From positions 1-64,000 of the IMG/VR virus record IMGVR_UViG_3300032116_014939: a DNA stretch of 64,000 nucleotides; one strand, 5' to 3'. The translations under genes and the position numbers were made by a program. A model generated the notes under the pieces. That model was not told the DNA's origin. It did no database searches and worked only from the letters and a program-made list of their open reading frames with translations. Below, one piece after another: positions 129-14,206 of the stretch (its first letter is position 1; each line of letters starts with the position of its first letter).

Positions 129-728
129 TTATCTTACCAAACTTACAAAACCTTTTTGGTAATGTGGTGTTCCTTTGTCATCACGGTAATACATCTTCCA
201 AGTGTATATGCCCGACTCACAATAGTACCCACTGTTATTAACATTACCAGTCCAATATTGTGATTGTGATTCAATAACACAAACCAGTTGGCCCCATTGG
301 GTATAAATCTCCAATCGTGGATTGAATACATTGGTTCCCTTGAAGGAAAATATATCATTCAACCCATCGTTGTTAGGTGAAAACGAATTGGGAACATAAA
401 GTTTATGACAGGCAGTGGTGGTGATAGTTAAAGAAGCAGTATCAGTACTACACCCATTTAAATCCACACCATACACTTCAATCAAATGATTATCGGTGGT
501 ATCATCCCAAGTCAATGAAATATCATTATCGGATTCAACCTGTCCAACACTATCAACCGTCCAGTAATAAACAACATTGTCTATGTTCTCAACAGAATAG
601 TTATGTGTCTTAAACTCCGAACACATATCAAGTACATTACCATCGTGTGTTATCGTTAGTGGTAAGGTGTCACACTGTCCAAAGAAGTGTGAAGGAATAA
701 ATAATAATACAAATAAAAGTTTTTTCAT
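129..728 (-). CDS. Secreted protein with T9SS type B (gliding-motility/CHU_C) C-terminal sorting domain
   Basis: N-terminal signal peptide; C-terminal YVPNSFSPNNDGLNDIF...IYTQWG...W.G...GIYTW...KGFVSLVR pattern. Confidence 0.85.
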   Translation of the reverse strand: MKKLLFVLLFIPSHFFGQCDTLPLTITHDGNVLDMCSEFKTHNYSVENIDNVVYYWTVDSVGQVESDNDISLTWDDTTDNHLIEVYGVDLNGCSTDTASLTITTTACHKLYVPNSFSPNNDGLNDIFSFKGTNVFNPRLEIYTQWGQLVCVIESQSQYWTGNVNNSGYYCESGIYTWKMYYRDDKGTPHYQKGFVSLVR

Positions 729-1301: not shown

Positions 1302-1525
1302 AAAGTTCCCCACCCTGAGATTATGGTGAGTAGTCATATCGGTTTTTTTGCTGTTTGAAAAACCTGCTGGGCATCCCCGATAAAAAAGTCAGTTCTTTAC
1401 GTCGGCAGTGATGAACCTATCTACTGTTTTATCCCGAATCGATTGCCTTTGGGAGGCGTTTTTTAACCCTATCCATTGTTAAATGAGTCTTGGATAAAAG
1501 ACTGGTGAGTATCTCTTACTCATTG

Positions 1526-1615
1526 TAGTCAGGACAGGATTCGAACCTGTGCTCCCCATTACAGGGAACGTTGTACAGCCCCCGAAGCGGCTGTGACACC
1601 AATTGCCACCTGACT
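1526..1615 (-). ncRNA. tRNA-like RNA A (anticodon loop replaced by a cUUCGg-capped stem)
   Basis: AGTCAGG/CCTGACT-A acceptor, ACAGG-TTCGAAT-CCTGT T-arm, no 7-nt anticodon loop. Confidence 0.75.
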
Positions 1616-1832
1616 ATATAAAAACACCCTTATCTATCCAACTTACAGGTGTTATGGCTGTCCTCATTGCTGAGTTAGGAATAAACTGTCTTGCTCCCCT
1701 TCGTGATGGGTTTTACCGACCTTAGTAGTCAACTAGAAGGTAATATATATACAAACCTTCAACTCTCCCCTATGGTTATCACACCATTTCTCATCGTATG
1801 GGACATACTATCTGATGATTAGTCAGAACGTG

Positions 1833-1899
1833 TAGTCAGAACAGGATTCGAACCTGCAATCTTCCTTGTTAGGAGCTTTGCCAATTAAGTTACCTGACT
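1833..1899 (-). ncRNA. tRNA-like RNA B (67 nt, 4-nt loop at the anticodon position)
   Basis: AGTCAGG/TCTGACT-A acceptor, intact D-loop and T-arm, TCCT-AACA-AGGA mini arm. Confidence 0.75.
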
Positions 1900-2057
1900 A
1901 TGGTGGTAGGATTGCTTTTTTATAGAAGAGCTCGCCTGCCTCAGAACTTCTTTGAGGATGAGAAGTCCTCTGTGTTGTGAAAGTCGGTAAAAATGCACTT
2001 TTACACCCTTTGTCCTGAACATAAACTATTCCTTTCTCAAGGGAACAACACGTTTAG

Positions 2058-2148
2058 TAGTCAGGGCCGGACTCGAACCGGATACCGTTCTCGACGGATT
2101 AGACAACCTTACGGATTTGGGTCCCTCCCTCATTACGCCCACCTGACT
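2058..2148 (-). ncRNA. tRNA-like RNA C (GUAA tetraloop at the anticodon position)
   Basis: AGTCAGG/CCTGACT-A acceptor, CCGG-TTCGAGT-CCGG T-arm, variable-arm hairpin. Confidence 0.7.
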
Positions 2149-2152
2149 CCGA

Positions 2153-2160
2153 CAAAGATA
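2153..2160 (-). promoter_or_regulatory. Bacteroidota-type -7 promoter box (TATCTTTG) for the second RNA block
   Basis: Matches TAnnTTTG; lies 4 nt upstream of tRNA-like RNA C. Confidence 0.65.
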
Positions 2161-2261
2161 TGGTAAGTTTTTCAATCTACCAAATCTTTTTTTATTCTTC
2201 TCTTCCCCATATTAACCATCCTATGAAGATTCCAATTACAATACCTGATGCCATATTTTTC

Positions 2262-2564
2262 TTATTCTGATAAATCTTTTTCTATTTCTTCATACCATTC
2301 TTCAACCGCAAATAATAATTGGATAAATTCACCATCTTCATCCGATTCATATTTTACGTGGAACCCACCTGTTGATACATCTGTTTTTTCTTTAAACGCC
2401 ATCTTTAATAATCGTCTTGCTTCTTGTCTCAATTCAGGAACCGTTGGAATACCTTCGTCAGAAGCCGCCCACTCCCAATTCAATACTTCCATTACTTTTC
2501 GGACTTGTTCAAACTTGAAGTAGTCCATTATACTATCAATTGCGTCTTGTTGTTTCTGTGTCAT
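2262..2564 (-). CDS. Hypothetical protein
   Basis: 100-aa ORF in tandem with 2566..2994. Confidence 0.75.
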   Translation of the reverse strand: MTQKQQDAIDSIMDYFKFEQVRKVMEVLNWEWAASDEGIPTVPELRQEARRLLKMAFKEKTDVSTGGFHVKYESDEDGEFIQLLFAVEEWYEEIEKDLSE

Positions 2565-2994: not shown

Positions 2995-3036
2995 AAGACA
3001 AATATAAGGTAAGTTTATTAATTAAACAAAAAAAAG

Positions 3037-3107
3037 TTGTCCCTGATGGATTCGAACCACCATTATCTGAACCAAAATCAGATGTCCTGCCTTTAGACGA
3101 AGGGACA
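3037..3107 (-). tRNA. tRNA-Gln(TTG)
   Basis: TGTCCCT/AGGGACA acceptor, loop TT-TTG-GT. Confidence 0.92.
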
Positions 3108-3167
3108 ATATGGAGCGTAGTGGGGCTGCAGTCCCCTGAGGCACCTACGCAAGTTACTCCTCTTTAG

Positions 3168-3240
3168 CGGCTCCAACGGGATTCGAACCCGTACCACACG
3201 GCGTGACAAGCCGGCATTGTAGCCATTCAACCATGGAGCC
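3168..3240 (-). tRNA. tRNA-Asp(GTC)
   Basis: GGCTCCA/TGGAGCC acceptor, loop TT-GTC-AC, G73. Confidence 0.92.
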
Positions 3241-3397
3241 AAAAGTGGGTGGAATCAGAGGCCTTCTGTCCACCGAGACCTCGTCGTTGACTTTCGTCAG
3301 AGCGTACCGAGACACTTTTTAAAACCCCATCTTCATCGGATTAACGGACCGACTGCCATATCGGAGGTGGGGGTTGTCCTGTTAATTCAGAACCTCG

Positions 3398-3470
3398 TGG
3401 TACCAGGTGGATTCGAACCACCGACACAAGGATTTTCAGTCCTTTGCTCTACCAACTGAGCTATGGTACC
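3398..3470 (-). tRNA. tRNA-Phe(GAA)
   Basis: Canonical cloverleaf, loop CT-GAA-AA. Confidence 0.95.
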
Positions 3471-3477
3471 ATTATAG

Positions 3478-3552
<75 letters not shown>

Positions 3553-3559
3553 AATTAAG

Positions 3560-3634
3560 TTCTCACGGTTGGAATCGAACCAACGACCTTTTGTGTATCA
3601 GACAAATGCTCTAAGCCAACTGAGCTACGTGAGA
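3560..3634 (-). tRNA. tRNA-Ile(GAT)
   Basis: TCTCACG/CGTGAGA acceptor, loop CT-GAT-AC. Confidence 0.88.
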
Positions 3635-3641
3635 ATATTAG

Positions 3642-3715
3642 AGCCTCCAGTCGGAATCGAACCAACGACCTACTGATTACAAATCAGTCGCTCTGACCTG
3701 CTGAGCTATGGAGGC
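3642..3715 (-). tRNA. tRNA-Thr(TGT)
   Basis: GCCTCCA/TGGAGGC acceptor, loop TT-TGT-AA. Confidence 0.95.
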
Positions 3716-3721
3716 TTGTTG

Positions 3722-3792
3722 CACGACAGTAGGGACTCGAACCCCAAACAACGGTTTTGGAGACCGTGATGATACCATTTCACCACTGACGT
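3722..3792 (-). tRNA. tRNA-Trp(CCA)
   Basis: Loop CT-CCA-AA, G73; one U-U mismatch in the acceptor stem. Confidence 0.9.
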
Positions 3793-3799
3793 GTTTAAG

Positions 3800-3874
3800 T
3801 GACCCCGGTGGGACTCGAACCCACGACTCCCTCATTAAAAGTGAGGTGCTCTAAACCTGCTGAGCTACGAAGTC
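3800..3874 (-). tRNA. tRNA-Lys(TTT)
   Basis: Canonical cloverleaf, loop CT-TTT-AA. Confidence 0.95.
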
Positions 3875-3884
3875 ATTATTTTTG

Positions 3885-3956
3885 CGGTGATGGGGAATTT
3901 CGAAATCCCGACCCTCTGATTAACAGTCAGATGCTCCACCTCTGAGCTACATCACC
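3885..3956 (-). tRNA. tRNA-Asn(GTT), first tRNA of the array
   Basis: GGTGATG/CATCACC acceptor, loop CT-GTT-AA. Confidence 0.93.
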
Positions 3957-3968
3957 ATTTTCCCAATA

Positions 3969-3980
3969 TGTCAAAGAACC
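3969..3980 (-). promoter_or_regulatory. boxA-like antitermination element GGTTCTTTGACA
   Basis: Resembles rRNA-operon boxA (TGCTCTTTAACA); a similar element precedes the large ncRNA at 14035-14047. Confidence 0.55.
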
Positions 3981-4017
3981 AAAAAAAAACCCTGAACTTT
4001 TTTGTAGTCCAGGGTTT
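3981..4017 (-). terminator. Intrinsic terminator (attenuator) between the leader ORF and the tRNA array
   Basis: AAACCCTGGACT-ACAAAAA-AGTTCAGGGTTT hairpin running into a U-tract (9 U in total). Confidence 0.85.
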
Positions 4018-4039
4018 CCTTATATATTTGATGATACGA

Positions 4040-4153
4040 TTACATCTTATTAAGAACCCTGAACTTACGGCAATCCTGCCCCTTAATCGTAAACCACGAT
4101 TGGCCCACGTTTGTCGGGAGATTACTTACGTTATGTGTTGAGTTCTGTTTCAT
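4040..4153 (-). CDS. Putative 37-aa leader peptide MKQNSTHNVSNLPTNVGQSWFTIKGQDCRKFRVLNKM
   Basis: ATG 4153 to TAA 4040, A-rich upstream context, lies between a promoter and the terminator; contains the antiterminator segment 4055-4066. Confidence 0.7.
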   Translation of the reverse strand: MKQNSTHNVSNLPTNVGQSWFTIKGQDCRKFRVLNKM

Positions 4154-4182
4154 TGTTTTCTTATTAAATATCAATTGTTTTA

Positions 4183-4214
4183 CAAAAGTACTACTATTTT
4201 TGAGTTATGTCAAG
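4183..4214 (-). promoter_or_regulatory. Bacteroidota sigma-A-type promoter of the leader/tRNA operon
   Basis: -7 box TACTTTTG at 4183-4190; CTTG(AC) 20 nt upstream at 4211-4214. Confidence 0.7.
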
Positions 4215-4268
4215 TTTTTTTTCATTTTAGTTTCAAATTTTAAATAAAATTATTACTATTTACATAAT

Positions 4269-4934
4269 ATGAACACTAGTGAATTACAACTAAAAAGATT
4301 AATGGACACTGTTGTTAAAATGTTATCTGTAATTAATGCAGATGGTATAACATTGCGTTTAACAGGTGAATATAAAAAATCATTTCATTACAAAAAAGCA
4401 CCTGTCTATACAATAGAAAACCCTAAAAACTTACCATACACCCATGAAGCTCTCTCAGGTTACATTGATGAAGAAATACATTCGTTAAGAAAATTTTTTC
4501 CTGAGGTTAACATCGCTCCACAATTTTTATATTATTTAGATTGCGATGATTTATATATCCCACAAAAAAGTTTAAATGAAATTAATAGTTGTCTTGTGGG
4601 AAAACCATTTAAATTAGATTCCCAATATGAACGTAAAAAAATAACGATTGAAGGTCGTTTTTCTAAAGACTTTTATATTGAAGTTGATGCCGAAATGATT
4701 GTCATAGACGTTAATTTATTAGTTAAATCTATGGAAATAACATTAGATGGTGAAGTTTACTATGGATTTGATGAAGATGAAATACTTGACATACTTCACG
4801 ATAAGTTTGACCACCATATTGATGAGCTAATATGGGGATGTCTAACTGAGGATATAACAAACAACAAATCTTTCGTTGATTTTAACTGGATGGGTTGGCA
4901 TGTGAATACTAACTATATGTTACCTTACTCCTGA
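4269..4934 (+). CDS. Hypothetical protein
   Basis: 221-aa ORF. Confidence 0.75.
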   Translation: MNTSELQLKRLMDTVVKMLSVINADGITLRLTGEYKKSFHYKKAPVYTIENPKNLPYTHEALSGYIDEEIHSLRKFFPEVNIAPQFLYYLDCDDLYIPQKSLNEINSCLVGKPFKLDSQYERKKITIEGRFSKDFYIEVDAEMIVIDVNLLVKSMEITLDGEVYYGFDEDEILDILHDKFDHHIDELIWGCLTEDITNNKSFVDFNWMGWHVNTNYMLPYS

Positions 4935-5494: not shown

Positions 5495-6067
5495 TTACCC
5501 TTCCAAAAAGGATAACACCTTTTCTTTAACTCCAAGTTGTTTGATACCCTCATTGTTCAAAGGTGTTAAGACAAAGTTATCAAGTCCCCACTCGTGTTCA
5601 TATTCCATTGAGTAACGCAATCCAGTCTTCCCCATCTCCAAGTCATCAATCGCTACCCAATGTGTAACTTCGGGATGTTCTTTTAACCACTCTTGAATCT
5701 GAACACTTCTTGTTCCTTCCAAATCCCAATTTCGGTGCCAGGTAACTTTTTCACCATCAATCGTATTGGTTGTGAAATCAATTGGTCGTTTGATGATACC
5801 TTGTTTCTCGTAGTAATCACCCATCTCTTCAACTGAACACCAAACTTTCCAATCAGAAGATACAACGATTTCAGCACCAGTCTGTTCCAAGATTTCATTC
5901 AATACCTTTATTGCCTTCTTGTCAAAGTTATCAAAGCGAGCATCAATAGGCATTGTCAATACTGATTGACTTAACTTTCGTCTAGCCTTTTTTTGTTTCT
6001 TAAATCGTGACCCCCAATTATCTGATAGACAGATAACTCCATCGTGGTCTAAAAAGATTACTTTCAT
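5495..6067 (-). CDS. HAD-family phosphatase, Swiss-Army-Knife RNA-repair-like
   Basis: FLDHDGV, IVVSSDW and WVAIDD motifs. Confidence 0.85.
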   Translation of the reverse strand: MKVIFLDHDGVICLSDNWGSRFKKQKKARRKLSQSVLTMPIDARFDNFDKKAIKVLNEILEQTGAEIVVSSDWKVWCSVEEMGDYYEKQGIIKRPIDFTTNTIDGEKVTWHRNWDLEGTRSVQIQEWLKEHPEVTHWVAIDDLEMGKTGLRYSMEYEHEWGLDNFVLTPLNNEGIKQLGVKEKVLSFLEG

Positions 6068-14034: not shown

Positions 14035-14206
14035 GTTTCAAAGAACGTATCGGACATTTCCGATTTGTTTTACAAACTTACGACTTTTTTTTCAATCTGT
14101 CAAGTAATTTGTGAACTTTTTTTTTGATTTAACTACCGAGTATCTTTCATTCCCTATAAGTGTTAAATCTTTTACAAACTTACAGCAAATATTCCGTAGT
14201 GTCAAA
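14035..14206 (-). promoter_or_regulatory. Tandem Bacteroidota-type promoters plus boxA-like element for the large ncRNA
   Basis: TAAGTTTG at 14073-14080 and 14175-14182, each with TTG(AC) 20 nt upstream; CGTTCTTTGAAAC at 14035-14047. Confidence 0.7.

What the first reader, a model, noticed from the sequence alone, without database searches (positions are those of the whole stretch)
4040..4153. The leader ORF looks like a broad tRNA sensor: 29 distinct codons in 37 positions
Seen: codons ATG AAA CAG AAC TCA ACA CAT AAC GTA AGT AAT CTC CCG ACA AAC GTG GGC CAA TCG TGG TTT ACG ATT AAG GGG CAG GAT TGC CGT AAG TTC AGG GTT CTT AAT AAG ATG. Many end in G/C (CTC, CCG, GTG, GGC, TCG, ACG, GGG, TGC), unusual for this AT-rich genome. 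All 13 amino acids served by the 14 downstream tRNAs occur in it, including rare W, C and H. The commonest residues, Asn (5) and Lys (4), match the first two tRNAs. Ala, Glu and Tyr are absent from both the peptide and the array. Met, Val, Gly and Arg are in the peptide but have no tRNA in this window. Inference: classic leaders repeat one amino acid, whereas this one seems to sample many tRNA species, so loss of almost any would cause a stall.
Basis: partly seen in the sequence, partly recalled or inferred. Interest (0 to 1): 0.85.

Follow-up and report, generated by a model that had tools for sequence, protein, structure and literature searches.

The report
Attenuator leader heading phage tRNA array
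The 37-codon reading frame is real and unusually codon-diverse, but that diversity comes from the G+C-rich RNA helices it lies in; the region is a highly conserved terminator/antiterminator switch through which all transcription of a jumbo phage's first tRNA genes must pass, a kind of control I found no description of for tRNA genes.

Summary
The minus-strand ORF 4153..4040 has 37 codons, 29 of them distinct, and a GC3 of 0.57 against 0.23 in this genome's genes. The diversity is not a designed feature. Random sequence of the same base composition gives 27-28 distinct triplets, the other two frames give 29 and 27, and tRNA genes give 29. The extra G+C sits in predicted helices (GC 0.58 paired, 0.24 unpaired).

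The region is a conserved unit: a Bacteroidota-type promoter, an A-rich 5' UTR, an ORF folded into a long hairpin, then an intrinsic terminator 24 nt before the first tRNA. Codons 30-36 duplicate the terminator's 3' arm and can pair with its 5' arm as an antiterminator. That pairing scores -18.5 kcal/mol, and no shuffle matched it.

About 60 related loci keep the unit at 78-100% identity, always as 37 codons with no indel. Meanwhile the tRNA set behind it changes from 4 to at least 20 genes, and the first tRNA is Asn, Trp or Lys. Relatives with the identical leader carry tRNA-Ala, -Glu and -Tyr.

Substitutions respect the RNA structure (p = 2e-5). Evidence for translation is only suggestive. 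The best reading is a transcription attenuator, probably read by a ribosome. The "broad tRNA sensor" design is not supported.

The parts
4183..4214 (-). Promoter of Bacteroidota type: TTG (inside CTTGACATAA, 4214..4205), a 20-nt spacer, then TACTTTTG (4190..4183), preceded by an A-tract.
   Evidence: The motif TTG-N18-20-TAnnTTTG occurs 21 times in the window against 5.0 +/- 2.4 in shuffles, 16 of them on the main coding strand. In relatives both boxes are nearly invariant (one change in two distant contigs), while the spacer between them differs at up to about 8 of 19 positions. The consensus itself is from established knowledge of Bacteroidetes sigma-A promoters. The transcription start (about 4176) is inferred.
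4154..4182 (-). A-rich 5' untranslated region with no Shine-Dalgarno sequence and little predicted structure.
   Evidence: It carries 1-nt indels in relatives at two or more sites, one of them 7 nt before the ATG. That breaks the in-frame TTG (4174) extension and leaves ATG 4153 as the only conserved start.
4040..4153 (-). The 37-codon ORF plus TAA (the finding).
   Evidence: It is intact, always 114 nt and free of indels in 56 loci (15 sequence variants) and in the diverged L068, L069, L072-L075. All 37 IMG/VR contigs keep exactly the same spacing although the search pattern allowed 65-94 nt.
4053..4146 (-). Long irregular hairpin (anti-antiterminator). Basal helix P1 pairs AGAACUC (4146..4140, codons 3-5) with GGGUUCU (4059..4053, codons 32-34). 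The apical helix pairs 4109..4101 with 4096..4088, with a variable 4-nt loop at 4100..4097.
   Evidence: MFE -54.1 kcal/mol against -38.2 +/- 3.9 in shuffles, z = -4.1. P1 is invariant. The apical helix shows CG>UG, UA>UG, GU>AU and GU>GC changes. The mid helix has one compensatory U-A>C-G change. Substitutions that keep pairing are strongly favoured (p = 2.4e-5).
4046..4066 (-). Region 2, the 5' strand of the antiterminator, covering codons 30-36. It includes a 12-nt copy (4066..4055) of the terminator's 3' arm sequence AAGTTCAGGGTT.
   Evidence: The best duplex with the terminator's 5' arm is -18.5 kcal/mol. This was reached by 0 of 2000 shuffles (mean -9.1 +/- 2.2) and by 0 of 421 other 151-nt windows of this genome. 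The same partner (codons 30-36) gives -14 to -23 kcal/mol in all 26 variants tested.
4030..4046 (-). Small 4-bp hairpin GAUG/CAUC that holds the last codon and the stop codon in its stem and loop.
   Evidence: Predicted. All four pairs are invariant, so it is neither supported nor refuted.
3981..4021 (-). Intrinsic terminator: 5' arm (region 3) 4021..4006, loop 4005..3999, 3' arm (region 4) 3998..3983, nine T's ending at 3981.
   Evidence: One search gives 16 pairs, 5 of them G-C, a 7-nt loop and a T-run. The hairpin scores -19 to -22 kcal/mol in nearly all variants (-17 in L052). One-sided changes keep it paired (UA>UG and GU>AU always together).
3957..3980 (-). Conserved 24-nt spacer (GGTTCTTTGACATATTGGGAAAAT) between the T-run and whichever tRNA comes first.
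   Evidence: It is conserved whether the first tRNA is Asn, Trp or Lys. It has no TAnnTTTG box, so no second promoter is visible here. Its function is unknown.
3036..3956 (-). The tRNA genes governed by the leader: Asn, Lys, Trp, Thr, Ile, Pro, Phe (5-9 nt apart), then Asp and Gln.
   Evidence: The next promoter-like motifs on this strand are at 3029..2999 and 2183..2153, so later parts of the array may have their own starts.

Best explanation
The region is the leader of a transcription unit whose products are phage tRNAs. It works as a transcription attenuator.

**Proposed sequence of events**
1. Transcription starts at a host-type (Bacteroidota) promoter about 23 nt before the ATG.
2. The nascent RNA folds into a long hairpin whose basal helix (P1) joins codons 3-5 to codons 32-34.
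3. About 20 nt after the stop codon comes a strong intrinsic terminator, 24 nt before the first tRNA gene. Every polymerase that makes these tRNAs must read through it.
4. Codons 30-36 have the same sequence as the terminator's 3' arm. They can therefore pair with its 5' arm instead. This antiterminator excludes both P1 and the terminator.

**Most likely reader of the switch: a ribosome on the 37-codon ORF**
- A ribosome that reaches the last codons or the stop quickly covers the antiterminator strand. The terminator then forms and little tRNA is made.
- A ribosome that lags in the first two thirds of the ORF holds P1 open and leaves codons 30-36 free. The antiterminator forms and the polymerase runs into the tRNA genes.
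- This would tie tRNA output to how well the infected cell is decoding. It would be a general translation-speed sensor, not a designed sampler of tRNA species.

**Shown by computation:** the sequence elements, the mutually exclusive pairings and their improbability, their conservation, and the substitution and indel patterns.

**Inferred:** the transcription start, translation of the ORF, the kinetic coupling, and the direction of regulation.
For: **Anatomy**
- Promoter, ORF, hairpin with z = -4.1 and terminator.
- No promoter motif lies between the terminator and the tightly packed tRNAs.

**Switch**
- The region 2 x region 3 duplex is -18.5 kcal/mol. This was reached by 0 of 2000 shuffles and by 0 of 421 other genomic windows.
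- A transcript ending before region 4 folds with the antiterminator (-41.9 kcal/mol; the 163-nt transcript, before region 3 exists, folds at -32.1). The full transcript folds with P1 plus the terminator (-52.6). The same holds in L068, L069 and L070.
- All 26 variants keep the pairing on codons 30-36.
- In L068/L069 the outer half of the helix is lost, and a 1-nt deletion in region 3 creates new pairs on the inner side.

**Constraint**
- The leader stays 97-100% identical where the neighbouring gene is 86-89% identical in DNA, or only 37% identical in protein.
- The promoter spacer next to it is heavily substituted.
- Structure-compatible substitutions are favoured (p = 2.4e-5). There is one compensatory pair and about 12 wobble-mediated pair changes.

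**Translation**
- The ATG sits in an open, A-rich context.
- The ORF is intact in all 19 distinct variants, across 54 distinct substitutions.
- I counted at least 11 indel events by eye in the 94 nt of UTR and 3' part of the alignment, and none in the 114-nt ORF. That gives P = 1.6e-4, or 0.007 if only the ORF's roughly 53 consensus-unpaired nucleotides could accept indels.
- Spacing is identical in 37 contigs.
- L068/L072 show what looks like a +2/-2 indel pair that restores the frame within 8 nt.
- Synonymous changes are enriched in this frame only (OR 2.95, p = 0.0014; the other frames give OR 0.57 and 0.95).
Against: - After allowing for RNA pairing and for the strong G/C-to-A/T substitution bias, the synonymous excess is no longer significant (p = 0.10; p = 0.02-0.07 in the subsets).
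- Variable sites are spread 11/13/18 over codon positions. That is not the profile of a typical coding sequence.
- Codon usage and GC3 are unlike this phage's genes.
- An open frame through 54 substitutions is only mildly surprising (about 0.09, my own hypergeometric estimate: 13 of the 324 possible single substitutions create a stop).
- The opposite strand also carries a chance 57-codon ORF here.
- Equilibrium folding with a ribosome footprint keeps the terminator for nearly every ribosome position, so the model depends on kinetics I cannot compute.
- There is no run of regulatory codons. Only a mild Asn excess appears (4 of the first 15 codons).
- No expression data exist for these uncultured phages.
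Confidence: 0.5

Rival explanations
1. An RNA-only switch. The same terminator/antiterminator pair is set by a trans factor that binds or stabilises the long hairpin. Candidates are a phage or host protein, a tRNA or a small molecule. The open reading frame would be incidental.
For: - RNA pairing is by far the strongest predictor of which substitutions are tolerated (p = 2.4e-5), while synonymy is not significant once pairing and mutation bias are included.
- Unpaired stretches such as the 5' strand 4134..4119 are almost invariant even where their former partners have changed. That suggests sequence-specific recognition.
- The conserved residues of the peptide (MKQNS, RVLN) are exactly those encoded by the P1 and antiterminator strands.
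- GC3 and codon usage are unlike coding sequence.
- Variable sites are spread evenly over codon positions.
Against: - There are no indels in 114 nt, against at least 11 in the flanking 94 nt, even counting only unpaired ORF positions (P = 0.007).
- Start and stop codons are kept in every variant.
- There is a frame-restoring block in L068/L072.
- The raw synonymous excess appears only in the ORF's frame.
- The ORF spans the sensor exactly, from 5 nt before P1 to 10 nt after the antiterminator core.
- No Rfam family matches, including T-box.
Confidence: 0.3
2. The ORF has been selected to contain many different codons, with a bias to G/C-ending ones, so that shortage of almost any tRNA species made by the array causes a stall and de-represses the array.
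For: - 29 distinct codons is in the top 0.7% of gene windows.
- All 13 amino acids of the window's array occur in the peptide (P = 0.016), and 25 of 37 codons are readable by the window's tRNAs against 18.4 +/- 3.1 (P = 0.02).
- The attenuator geometry fits stall-dependent read-through.
- Four of the six contigs whose leader gained an Ala codon carry tRNA-Ala in the part recovered.
Against: - The diversity equals the composition-matched expectation, the other two frames, and tRNA genes.
- The G+C is in helices.
- GC3 drops to 0.35-0.46 and distinct codons range from 26 to 30 in diverged variants, with the highlighted codons replaced.
- The identical leader precedes arrays with 4 to 20 or more tRNAs, whose first tRNA is Asn, Trp or Lys. 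Some have Ala, Glu and Tyr genes the peptide never uses, and some lack Asn, Lys or Thr genes in the part recovered although the leader keeps 5 Asn, 4 Lys and 3 Thr codons.
- The Ala-codon hint rests on only two mutational events. Five contigs have tRNA-Ala without an Ala codon.
- Single scattered codons give weak stalls in known attenuators (established knowledge of trp, his, phe and thr leaders).
Confidence: 0.1
3. No regulation. The unit is an ordinary small gene (a 37-residue basic peptide) or a stable small RNA with its own promoter and a leaky terminator, and it merely sits ahead of the tRNA genes. Phage T4 likewise keeps small stable RNAs in its tRNA cluster.
For: - The promoter and terminator bracket a product of about 195 nt.
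- The unit is strongly conserved.
- Gene callers occasionally annotate the peptide (P0081, P0094).
- Attenuator-derived RNAs and leader peptides can act in trans (PMC6614838, PMC7298713).
Against: - It does not explain the 12-nt duplication of the terminator arm inside the ORF, or the conserved and re-engineered antiterminator pairing.
- No other promoter is visible for the seven tightly packed tRNAs 24 nt downstream.
- The peptide tolerates 10 changes in 37 residues.
- The unit always sits at the head of a tRNA array, whatever lies upstream.
Confidence: 0.1

Closest known systems
Ribosome-mediated (leader-peptide) transcription attenuators of amino-acid operons and of pheST: trpL, hisL, pheL, thrL, ilvL, leuL, pheM. 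A predicted Bacteroidetes example is Bacteroid-trp (RF01692, listed in PMC2864571; that it is a leader-peptide attenuator is from memory).
   Same: - A short ORF directly after the promoter.
- Three mutually exclusive pairings (1:2, 2:3, 3:4), ending in a hairpin followed by a U-run.
- The end of the ORF overlaps the antiterminator strand, and the stop codon lies shortly after it.
   Different: - No run or cluster of codons for one amino acid.
- At 37 codons the ORF is longer than most such leaders.
- The regulated products are tRNAs, not enzymes or a synthetase.
- The element belongs to a phage.
- No Rfam leader family reaches threshold. The best are rnk_leader at 27 bits (threshold 50) and Thr_leader at 20 bits (threshold 55).
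Coupling-type attenuators without regulatory codons (E. coli pyrBI and pyrE), and drug-sensing leader ORFs (ermC, cat, mef/msr; PMC4335068).
   Same: The signal is how closely, or whether, a ribosome follows on a leader ORF, rather than supply of one amino acid. This is the behaviour expected here.
   Different: - In pyrBI the leader ORF runs through the terminator, so the ribosome blocks it directly. Here the ORF stops about 20 nt before the terminator stem and acts through an antiterminator.
- No U-rich pause tract or drug-dependent arrest motif was identified.
T-box riboswitches
   Same: A terminator/antiterminator leader that reports tRNA status.
   Different: - No T-box sequence, specifier loop or stem I architecture, and no Rfam hit.
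- T-boxes control synthetase and amino-acid genes in Firmicutes and Actinobacteria and are not translated.
Protein-set attenuators in which a factor stabilises an anti-antiterminator hairpin (PyrR; L10(L12)4 on the B. subtilis rplJL leader, PMC4538822).
   Same: The three-hairpin logic. The long conserved hairpin here could be such a binding site (the RNA-only rival).
   Different: No candidate binding protein or motif was identified. Here an ORF spans the hairpin exactly.
Small stable RNAs in the phage T4 tRNA cluster, and the short terminated lambda 6S transcript before tR' (from memory).
   Same: A short RNA of about 200 nt made next to, or ahead of, phage genes from a strong promoter.
   Different: - The T4 species are processed from the tRNA precursor and are not upstream leaders.
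- Lambda read-through needs the Q protein at the promoter and has no alternative hairpin.

Membership tests
Leader-peptide transcription attenuator | A short ORF with its own start codon directly downstream of the promoter and upstream of the regulated genes. | tested here: met
   ATG 4153 lies about 23 nt after the inferred start. The 37 codons are conserved in all variants.
Leader-peptide transcription attenuator | An intrinsic terminator (G+C-containing hairpin plus U-run) between the leader ORF and the regulated genes. | tested here: met
   4021..3981: 16 pairs and nine U's, 24 nt before tRNA-Asn.
Leader-peptide transcription attenuator | An antiterminator pairing that excludes the terminator and overlaps the 3' end of the ORF, plus an upstream pairing (1:2) that excludes the antiterminator. 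| tested here: met
   - The 2:3 duplex is -18.5 kcal/mol and was never reached by shuffles.
- It is conserved on codons 30-36 in 26 variants.
- P1 (1:2) is invariant.
- Co-transcriptional folds switch as expected.
Leader-peptide transcription attenuator | A run or enrichment of codons for the amino acid(s) whose supply is sensed. | tested here: not met
   There are no tandem repeats. The most frequent residue is Asn, at codons 4, 8, 11, 15 and 35. Codon content does not follow the tRNA set.
Leader-peptide transcription attenuator | The ORF is translated, and translation sets the choice of structure. | tested here: inconclusive
   - For: no indels in the ORF (P = 0.007 to 1.6e-4), an intact frame, and a raw synonymous excess in this frame only (p = 0.0014).
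- Against: the excess drops to p = 0.10 after controlling for pairing and G/C-to-A/T bias.
- A functional test needs experiments.
T-box riboswitch | The conserved T-box sequence in the antiterminator bulge, and stem I with a specifier loop. | tested here: not met
   No T-box hit even at E <= 10 on the 281-nt region or at E <= 1 on 6 kb.
Any Rfam 15 family | A covariance-model score at or above the family's gathering threshold. | tested here: not met
   The best is rnk_leader at 27.4 bits against a threshold of 50. All other matches in the leader region (3950..4230) are 21 bits or less.
Functional small protein or arrest peptide | Conservation at the amino-acid level beyond what the nucleotide constraints explain. 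| tested here: not met
   - Up to 10 of 37 residues differ, including a block of four consecutive residues.
- The invariant residues coincide with the P1 and antiterminator strands.
- There are no homologues outside this phage group. Only P0081, P0093 and P0094 are relatives; the other hits are compositional matches to long repeat proteins.

The most novel reading that the evidence does not exclude
A clade of freshwater jumbo phages of Bacteroidota regulates its own tRNA supply by feedback from translation. A ribosome reading a 37-codon leader decides whether RNA polymerase terminates 24 nt before the tRNA array or runs into it. tRNA genes would then be switched on when decoding in the infected cell slows, for example as host tRNAs run down or are cut by anticodon nucleases. 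This would be the first leader-ORF attenuator known to control tRNA genes, and one that reads global decoding speed rather than one amino acid.
Probability: 0.3. Interest if true: 0.85.

Novelty: new variant of a known kind. Interest (0 to 1): 0.6.

Why it matters
Phage tRNA genes are explained in two ways. One is codon compensation. The more recent one is replacement of host tRNAs destroyed by defence nucleases (PMC10264068, PMC11464382, PMC11555353). How phages control their expression is hardly addressed. My searches of the held library found nothing on attenuators or leader ORFs ahead of tRNA operons.

Here a strong terminator stands between the only visible promoter and the tRNAs. A conserved, statistically improbable antiterminator overlaps a conserved ORF. 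This suggests that tRNA output is conditional.

If the switch is read by the ribosome, it links tRNA production to decoding performance. That makes the "why do phages carry tRNAs" question testable with a small reporter. If it is read by another factor, it is a new riboregulator class. In either case it gives a compact, well-delimited element of about 235 nt for experiments.

Tried and rejected
- **blastn against GenBank phages:** only the tRNA-Asn part matched, so there is no cultured relative carrying the leader.
- **Rfam, three scans:** no family matched, including tmRNA, 6S, Y-RNA-like, T-box, GOLLD and ROOL.
- **GTDB genomes, two pattern scans:** no copy in bacterial or archaeal genomes.
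- **Peptide searches:** these returned only members of the same leader family. They were useful because they led to the diverged copies L068 and L069. The other hits were compositional matches to long repeat proteins.
rejected. Its central G-C pair is broken in 12 of 19 variants. The register CGUGGGCCA/UGGUUUACG places the hypervariable bases in a 4-nt loop and keeps 97% of cells paired.
- **The 57-codon ORF on the plus strand (3968..4141):** rejected. 1-, 2- and 3-nt indels in the terminator region break it in relatives.
- **The 44-codon TTG-started extension:** rejected. A 1-nt indel lies between the TTG and the ATG in many relatives.
- **My own early result that synonymous changes are enriched (p = 0.002):** it weakened to p = 0.02-0.10 once the G/C-to-A/T substitution bias and more diverged sequences were included. 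I therefore do not treat translation as shown.
- **Search for a second promoter between the terminator and the first tRNA:** none of Bacteroidota type was found.
- **Strict covariation:** only one two-sided compensatory pair was found. The family is too uniform for an R-scape-type test.
- **Equilibrium folding with a ribosome footprint:** it does not by itself predict antitermination, so the model rests on kinetics.
Full report
**1. What is there**

On the minus strand, ATG 4153 opens 37 sense codons that end at TAA 4042..4040. GC3 is 0.57 and GC is 0.43, in a window of GC 0.31.

ARAGORN finds 14 tRNA genes on the same strand from 3956 down to 775, beginning with Asn and Lys. The window starts at position 1 of a 242-kb contig (IMGVR_UViG_3300032116_014939, also Ga0315903_10000024), so the array is cut by the contig end.

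Neighbouring proteins in the window's relatives carry CHU_C and Por_Secre_tail sorting domains. The motif TTG-N18-20-TAnnTTTG is four-fold enriched (21 occurrences against 5.0 +/- 2.4). Both point to a Bacteroidota host.

**2. Is the codon diversity more than chance?**

- *Against this genome's genes, yes.* In 13,823 windows of 37 codons from 48 long ORFs the mean is 22.3 +/- 2.7 distinct codons, and only 0.67% reach 29. GC3 is 0.23 +/- 0.09, and only 0.007% reach 0.57.
- *Against the right null, no.* Random stop-free sequence of the leader's base composition gives 27.1 +/- 2.1. Shuffles of the leader give 28.0 +/- 2.0. The other two frames of the same stretch give 29 and 27. 111-nt windows of the tRNA genes give 28.9.
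- *The composition is structural.* GC is 0.58 at predicted paired positions and 0.24 at unpaired ones. 14 of the 21 G/C-ending codons have their third base in a pair.

The diversity is therefore a by-product of the helices and is not a property of this reading frame.

**3. Anatomy**

Reading 5' to 3' on the minus strand:

| Element | Coordinates | Notes |
|---|---|---|
| Promoter | 4214..4183 | A-tract, TTG, 20-nt spacer, TACTTTTG |
| 5' UTR | 4182..4154 | A-rich, unstructured, no Shine-Dalgarno |
| ORF | 4153..4040 | 37 codons plus TAA |
| Long hairpin | 4146..4053 | Basal helix P1 joins codons 3-5 to codons 32-34 |
| Small hairpin | 4046..4030 | 4 bp, around the stop codon |
| Terminator | 4021..3981 | 16 pairs, nine U's |
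| Spacer | 3980..3957 | 24 nt, conserved |
| First tRNA (Asn) | 3956..3884 | |

- The 216-nt stretch folds at -54.1 kcal/mol against -38.2 +/- 3.9 for shuffles, z = -4.1.
- The next six tRNAs follow at 5-9 nt intervals. No promoter motif lies between the terminator and the tRNAs. Transcripts of these tRNAs must therefore pass the terminator.
- The 12 nt AAGTTCAGGGTT occur twice: at 4066..4055 inside codons 30-34, and at 3999..3988 as the terminator's 3' arm. Both copies are complementary to the terminator's 5' arm.
- The resulting alternative duplex is -18.5 kcal/mol. None of 2000 shuffles of the upstream 151 nt reached it (mean -9.1 +/- 2.2), and none of 421 other 151-nt windows of the genome did.
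- A transcript that ends after the 5' arm folds with this antiterminator at -41.9 kcal/mol. The 163-nt transcript, which ends before that arm is made, folds at -32.1. The complete transcript folds with P1 plus the terminator at -52.6.

**4. Relatives**

I fetched 75 loci, some of them repeated fetches of the same contigs. About 60 of them carry the leader: 37 IMG/VR contigs, plus ENA, JGI, Logan and NCBI contigs including the 294-kb LR796235. They came from:
- searches with the neighbouring 221-residue protein;
- DNA patterns;
- the peptide.

Conservation pattern:
- Most copies are 97-100% identical in the leader. The neighbouring gene is 86-89% identical in DNA, or in L050 only 37% identical in protein.
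- The promoter spacer beside the leader differs at up to about 8 of 19 positions while both promoter boxes stay nearly fixed.
- Six contigs (L068, L069, L072, L073/L074, L075) are more diverged. I estimate about 78-83% identity in the ORF from the alignment.
- In L011 two restriction-modification-like genes are inserted just upstream of the promoter. In L068/L069 the upstream genes are different and co-directional.
- In every case the unit of promoter, leader, terminator and spacer stays with the head of a tRNA array. There is one copy per locus and one in the window.
- Nothing similar exists in 185,579 bacterial and archaeal species genomes, in GenBank phages or in Rfam.

**5. Does the leader track the tRNA set? 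No**

With an unchanged or nearly unchanged leader:
- The first tRNA is Asn, Trp or Lys.
- The recovered arrays hold from 4 tRNAs (L052) to 20 (L021).
- Several arrays show no Asn, Lys or Thr gene in the part recovered (L020, L025, L050, L056, L059).
- Fifteen loci carry tRNA-Ala. L021, L036 and L039 carry tRNA-Glu and tRNA-Tyr after Cys-Phe-Met, which is exactly where the window is cut.

Their nominal probabilities (0.016 for full coverage, 0.02 for decodable codons) should not be taken at face value.

In diverged variants GC3 is 0.35-0.46 and distinct codons number 26-30. CTC, GTG, TCG, GGG, TGC and ACG are replaced.

**6. RNA structure**

- Across 19 distinct variants P1 is invariant.
- The apical helix 4109..4101/4096..4088 changes only through wobble intermediates (CG>UG, UA>UG, GU>AU, GU>GC). 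Its 4-nt loop is hypervariable.
- The mid helix has one compensatory U-A>C-G change.
- The terminator shows linked one-sided changes.
- I modelled the 54 distinct substitutions among all possible ones. Keeping or not touching a pair is strongly favoured (p = 2.4e-5). G/C-to-A/T changes are also favoured (p = 6e-4).
- The antiterminator is kept in all 26 variants tested, always on codons 30-36, at -14 to -23 kcal/mol.
- In L068/L069 the outer half of that helix is lost, and a 1-nt deletion in region 3 brings GG into register to pair with CU of GGGUUCUU.
- Strict covariation is too sparse for a formal test.

**7. Is the ORF translated?**

*For:*
- The ATG is in an open, A-rich context of the kind Bacteroidota use (established knowledge).
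- Start, stop and length are kept in every variant.
- I counted at least 11 indel events by eye in the 94 nt of UTR and 3' part, and none in the 114-nt ORF. That gives P = 1.6e-4, or 0.007 if only the ORF's roughly 53 consensus-unpaired bases could accept them.
- All 37 IMG/VR contigs have identical spacing, although the search pattern allowed 65-94 nt.
- L068/L072 differ from L069 by what looks like a +2/-2 indel pair that restores the frame.
- Synonymous changes are enriched in this frame only (OR 2.95, p = 0.0014; other frames give OR 0.57 and 0.95).

*Against:*
- With pairing and mutation bias in the model the synonymous effect is p = 0.10. Earlier subsets gave 0.02-0.07.
- Variable sites fall 11/13/18 over codon positions.
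- Codon usage is unlike the phage's genes.
- Up to 10 of 37 residues change. The invariant residues (MKQNS, RVLN) are those encoded by the P1 and antiterminator strands.

I conclude that translation is plausible, at roughly even odds or slightly better. The peptide itself is not the functional product.

**8. Mechanism**

The best-supported reading is a transcription attenuator.

- *Shown by computation:* the elements, their mutually exclusive pairings, their improbability, and their conservation.
- *Inferred:* a ribosome on the ORF sets the switch. Arriving quickly at codons 30-37, it masks the antiterminator strand and the terminator forms. Lagging earlier, it keeps P1 open, the antiterminator forms, and polymerase enters the tRNA genes.

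With no codon run, this would report decoding speed in general.

Equilibrium folds with a ribosome footprint do not reproduce the switch, so kinetics must carry it. The main rival is the same RNA switch set by a bound factor.

**9. Comparison with known systems, and novelty**

- The architecture is that of leader-peptide attenuators. Four defining features are met, the codon-run feature is not met, and translation is unproven.
- In behaviour it is closer to coupling-type leaders (pyrBI) or drug-sensing leader ORFs.
- It is not a T-box and matches no Rfam family. The best sub-threshold hits happen to be attenuator leaders (rnk_leader 27 bits, Thr_leader 20 bits), which is not evidence.
- I found no report of an attenuator or leader ORF ahead of tRNA genes, phage or cellular.
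- I therefore class it as a new variant of a known kind.

**10. Limits**

- The phages are uncultured and there are no expression data.
- The family is very uniform.
- Several of my tests were chosen after seeing the data.

Noticed in passing
window 3957-3980 (minus strand); the same element occurs in all related loci: A 24-nt spacer (GGTTCTTTGACATATTGGGAAAAT) between the terminator's T-run and the first tRNA is conserved whichever tRNA comes first (Asn, Trp or Lys). It shares TTGACATA with the leader's own promoter box but has no -7 box. Its role is unknown. It could be a processing site, a binding site or a pairing partner.
   Followed up: partly
window 1525-2262 (minus strand): There is a stretch of about 650 nt inside the tRNA array with no convincing ORF. 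Rfam finds a tRNA at 1833..1899 (38 bits) that ARAGORN misses. The 91-nt 'tRNA-Pro (cgg)' at 1525..1615 barely passes (29.9 bits). A promoter-like motif lies at 2183..2153. These may be degenerate or intron-containing tRNAs.
   Followed up: partly
related loci L001-L075: The tRNA array is highly plastic among near-identical phages. The recovered parts hold from 4 to 20 genes. Blocks such as Val-Ala, Gly, Met and Thr are present or absent, and protein genes are interspersed. Across loci the set covers all 20 amino acids.
   Followed up: partly
L011 1676-3301 (the same contig as L022): Two genes are inserted between the neighbouring gene and the leader's promoter: a 234-residue protein with a DPPY motif (DNA methyltransferase-like) and a 305-residue partner. 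This looks like a restriction-modification cassette. The insertion point is exactly at the upstream edge of the promoter's A-tract.
   Followed up: no
L016/L001 group, between the terminator and the spacer (about 130 nt): An insertion carrying a tRNA-like T-arm (GGGTTCGAATCCC) sits between the T-run and the conserved spacer. It is probably a tRNA remnant, and ARAGORN does not call it.
   Followed up: no
L014, L027, L032, L036 (tRNA-??? with 2-nt or 4-nt anticodons); L070/L071 (tRNA-Phe aaa); L009/L015 (tRNA-Tyr ata): ARAGORN reports odd tRNAs in some relatives, with anticodon loops of unusual length or unusual anticodons. They could be artefacts, pseudogenes or decoding oddities.
   Followed up: no
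L066 3001-3507 and L067 24-530: A distant paralogue (29% identity) of the 221-residue protein encoded next to the leader (window 4269..4934) sits inside another part of a tRNA array, between tRNA-Cys and the Arg-Ser-His-Leu-Ser block. This protein family seems tied to the tRNA region. No Pfam domain is on record for any of its 78 members found.
   Followed up: no
window 129-728 (minus strand); homologues in L044, L046, L048: The phage encodes proteins with Bacteroidota type-IX secretion sorting domains (CHU_C; Por_Secre_tail in L046). This is a useful host indicator. The product of 5495..6067 belongs to HAD_SAK_2.
   Followed up: partly
window, both strands: Bacteroidota-type promoter motifs (TTG-N18-20-TAnnTTTG) are four-fold enriched and lie mostly on the main coding strand. 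A tandem pair occurs at 14205..14175 and 14103..14073, both starting with TTGACA.
   Followed up: no
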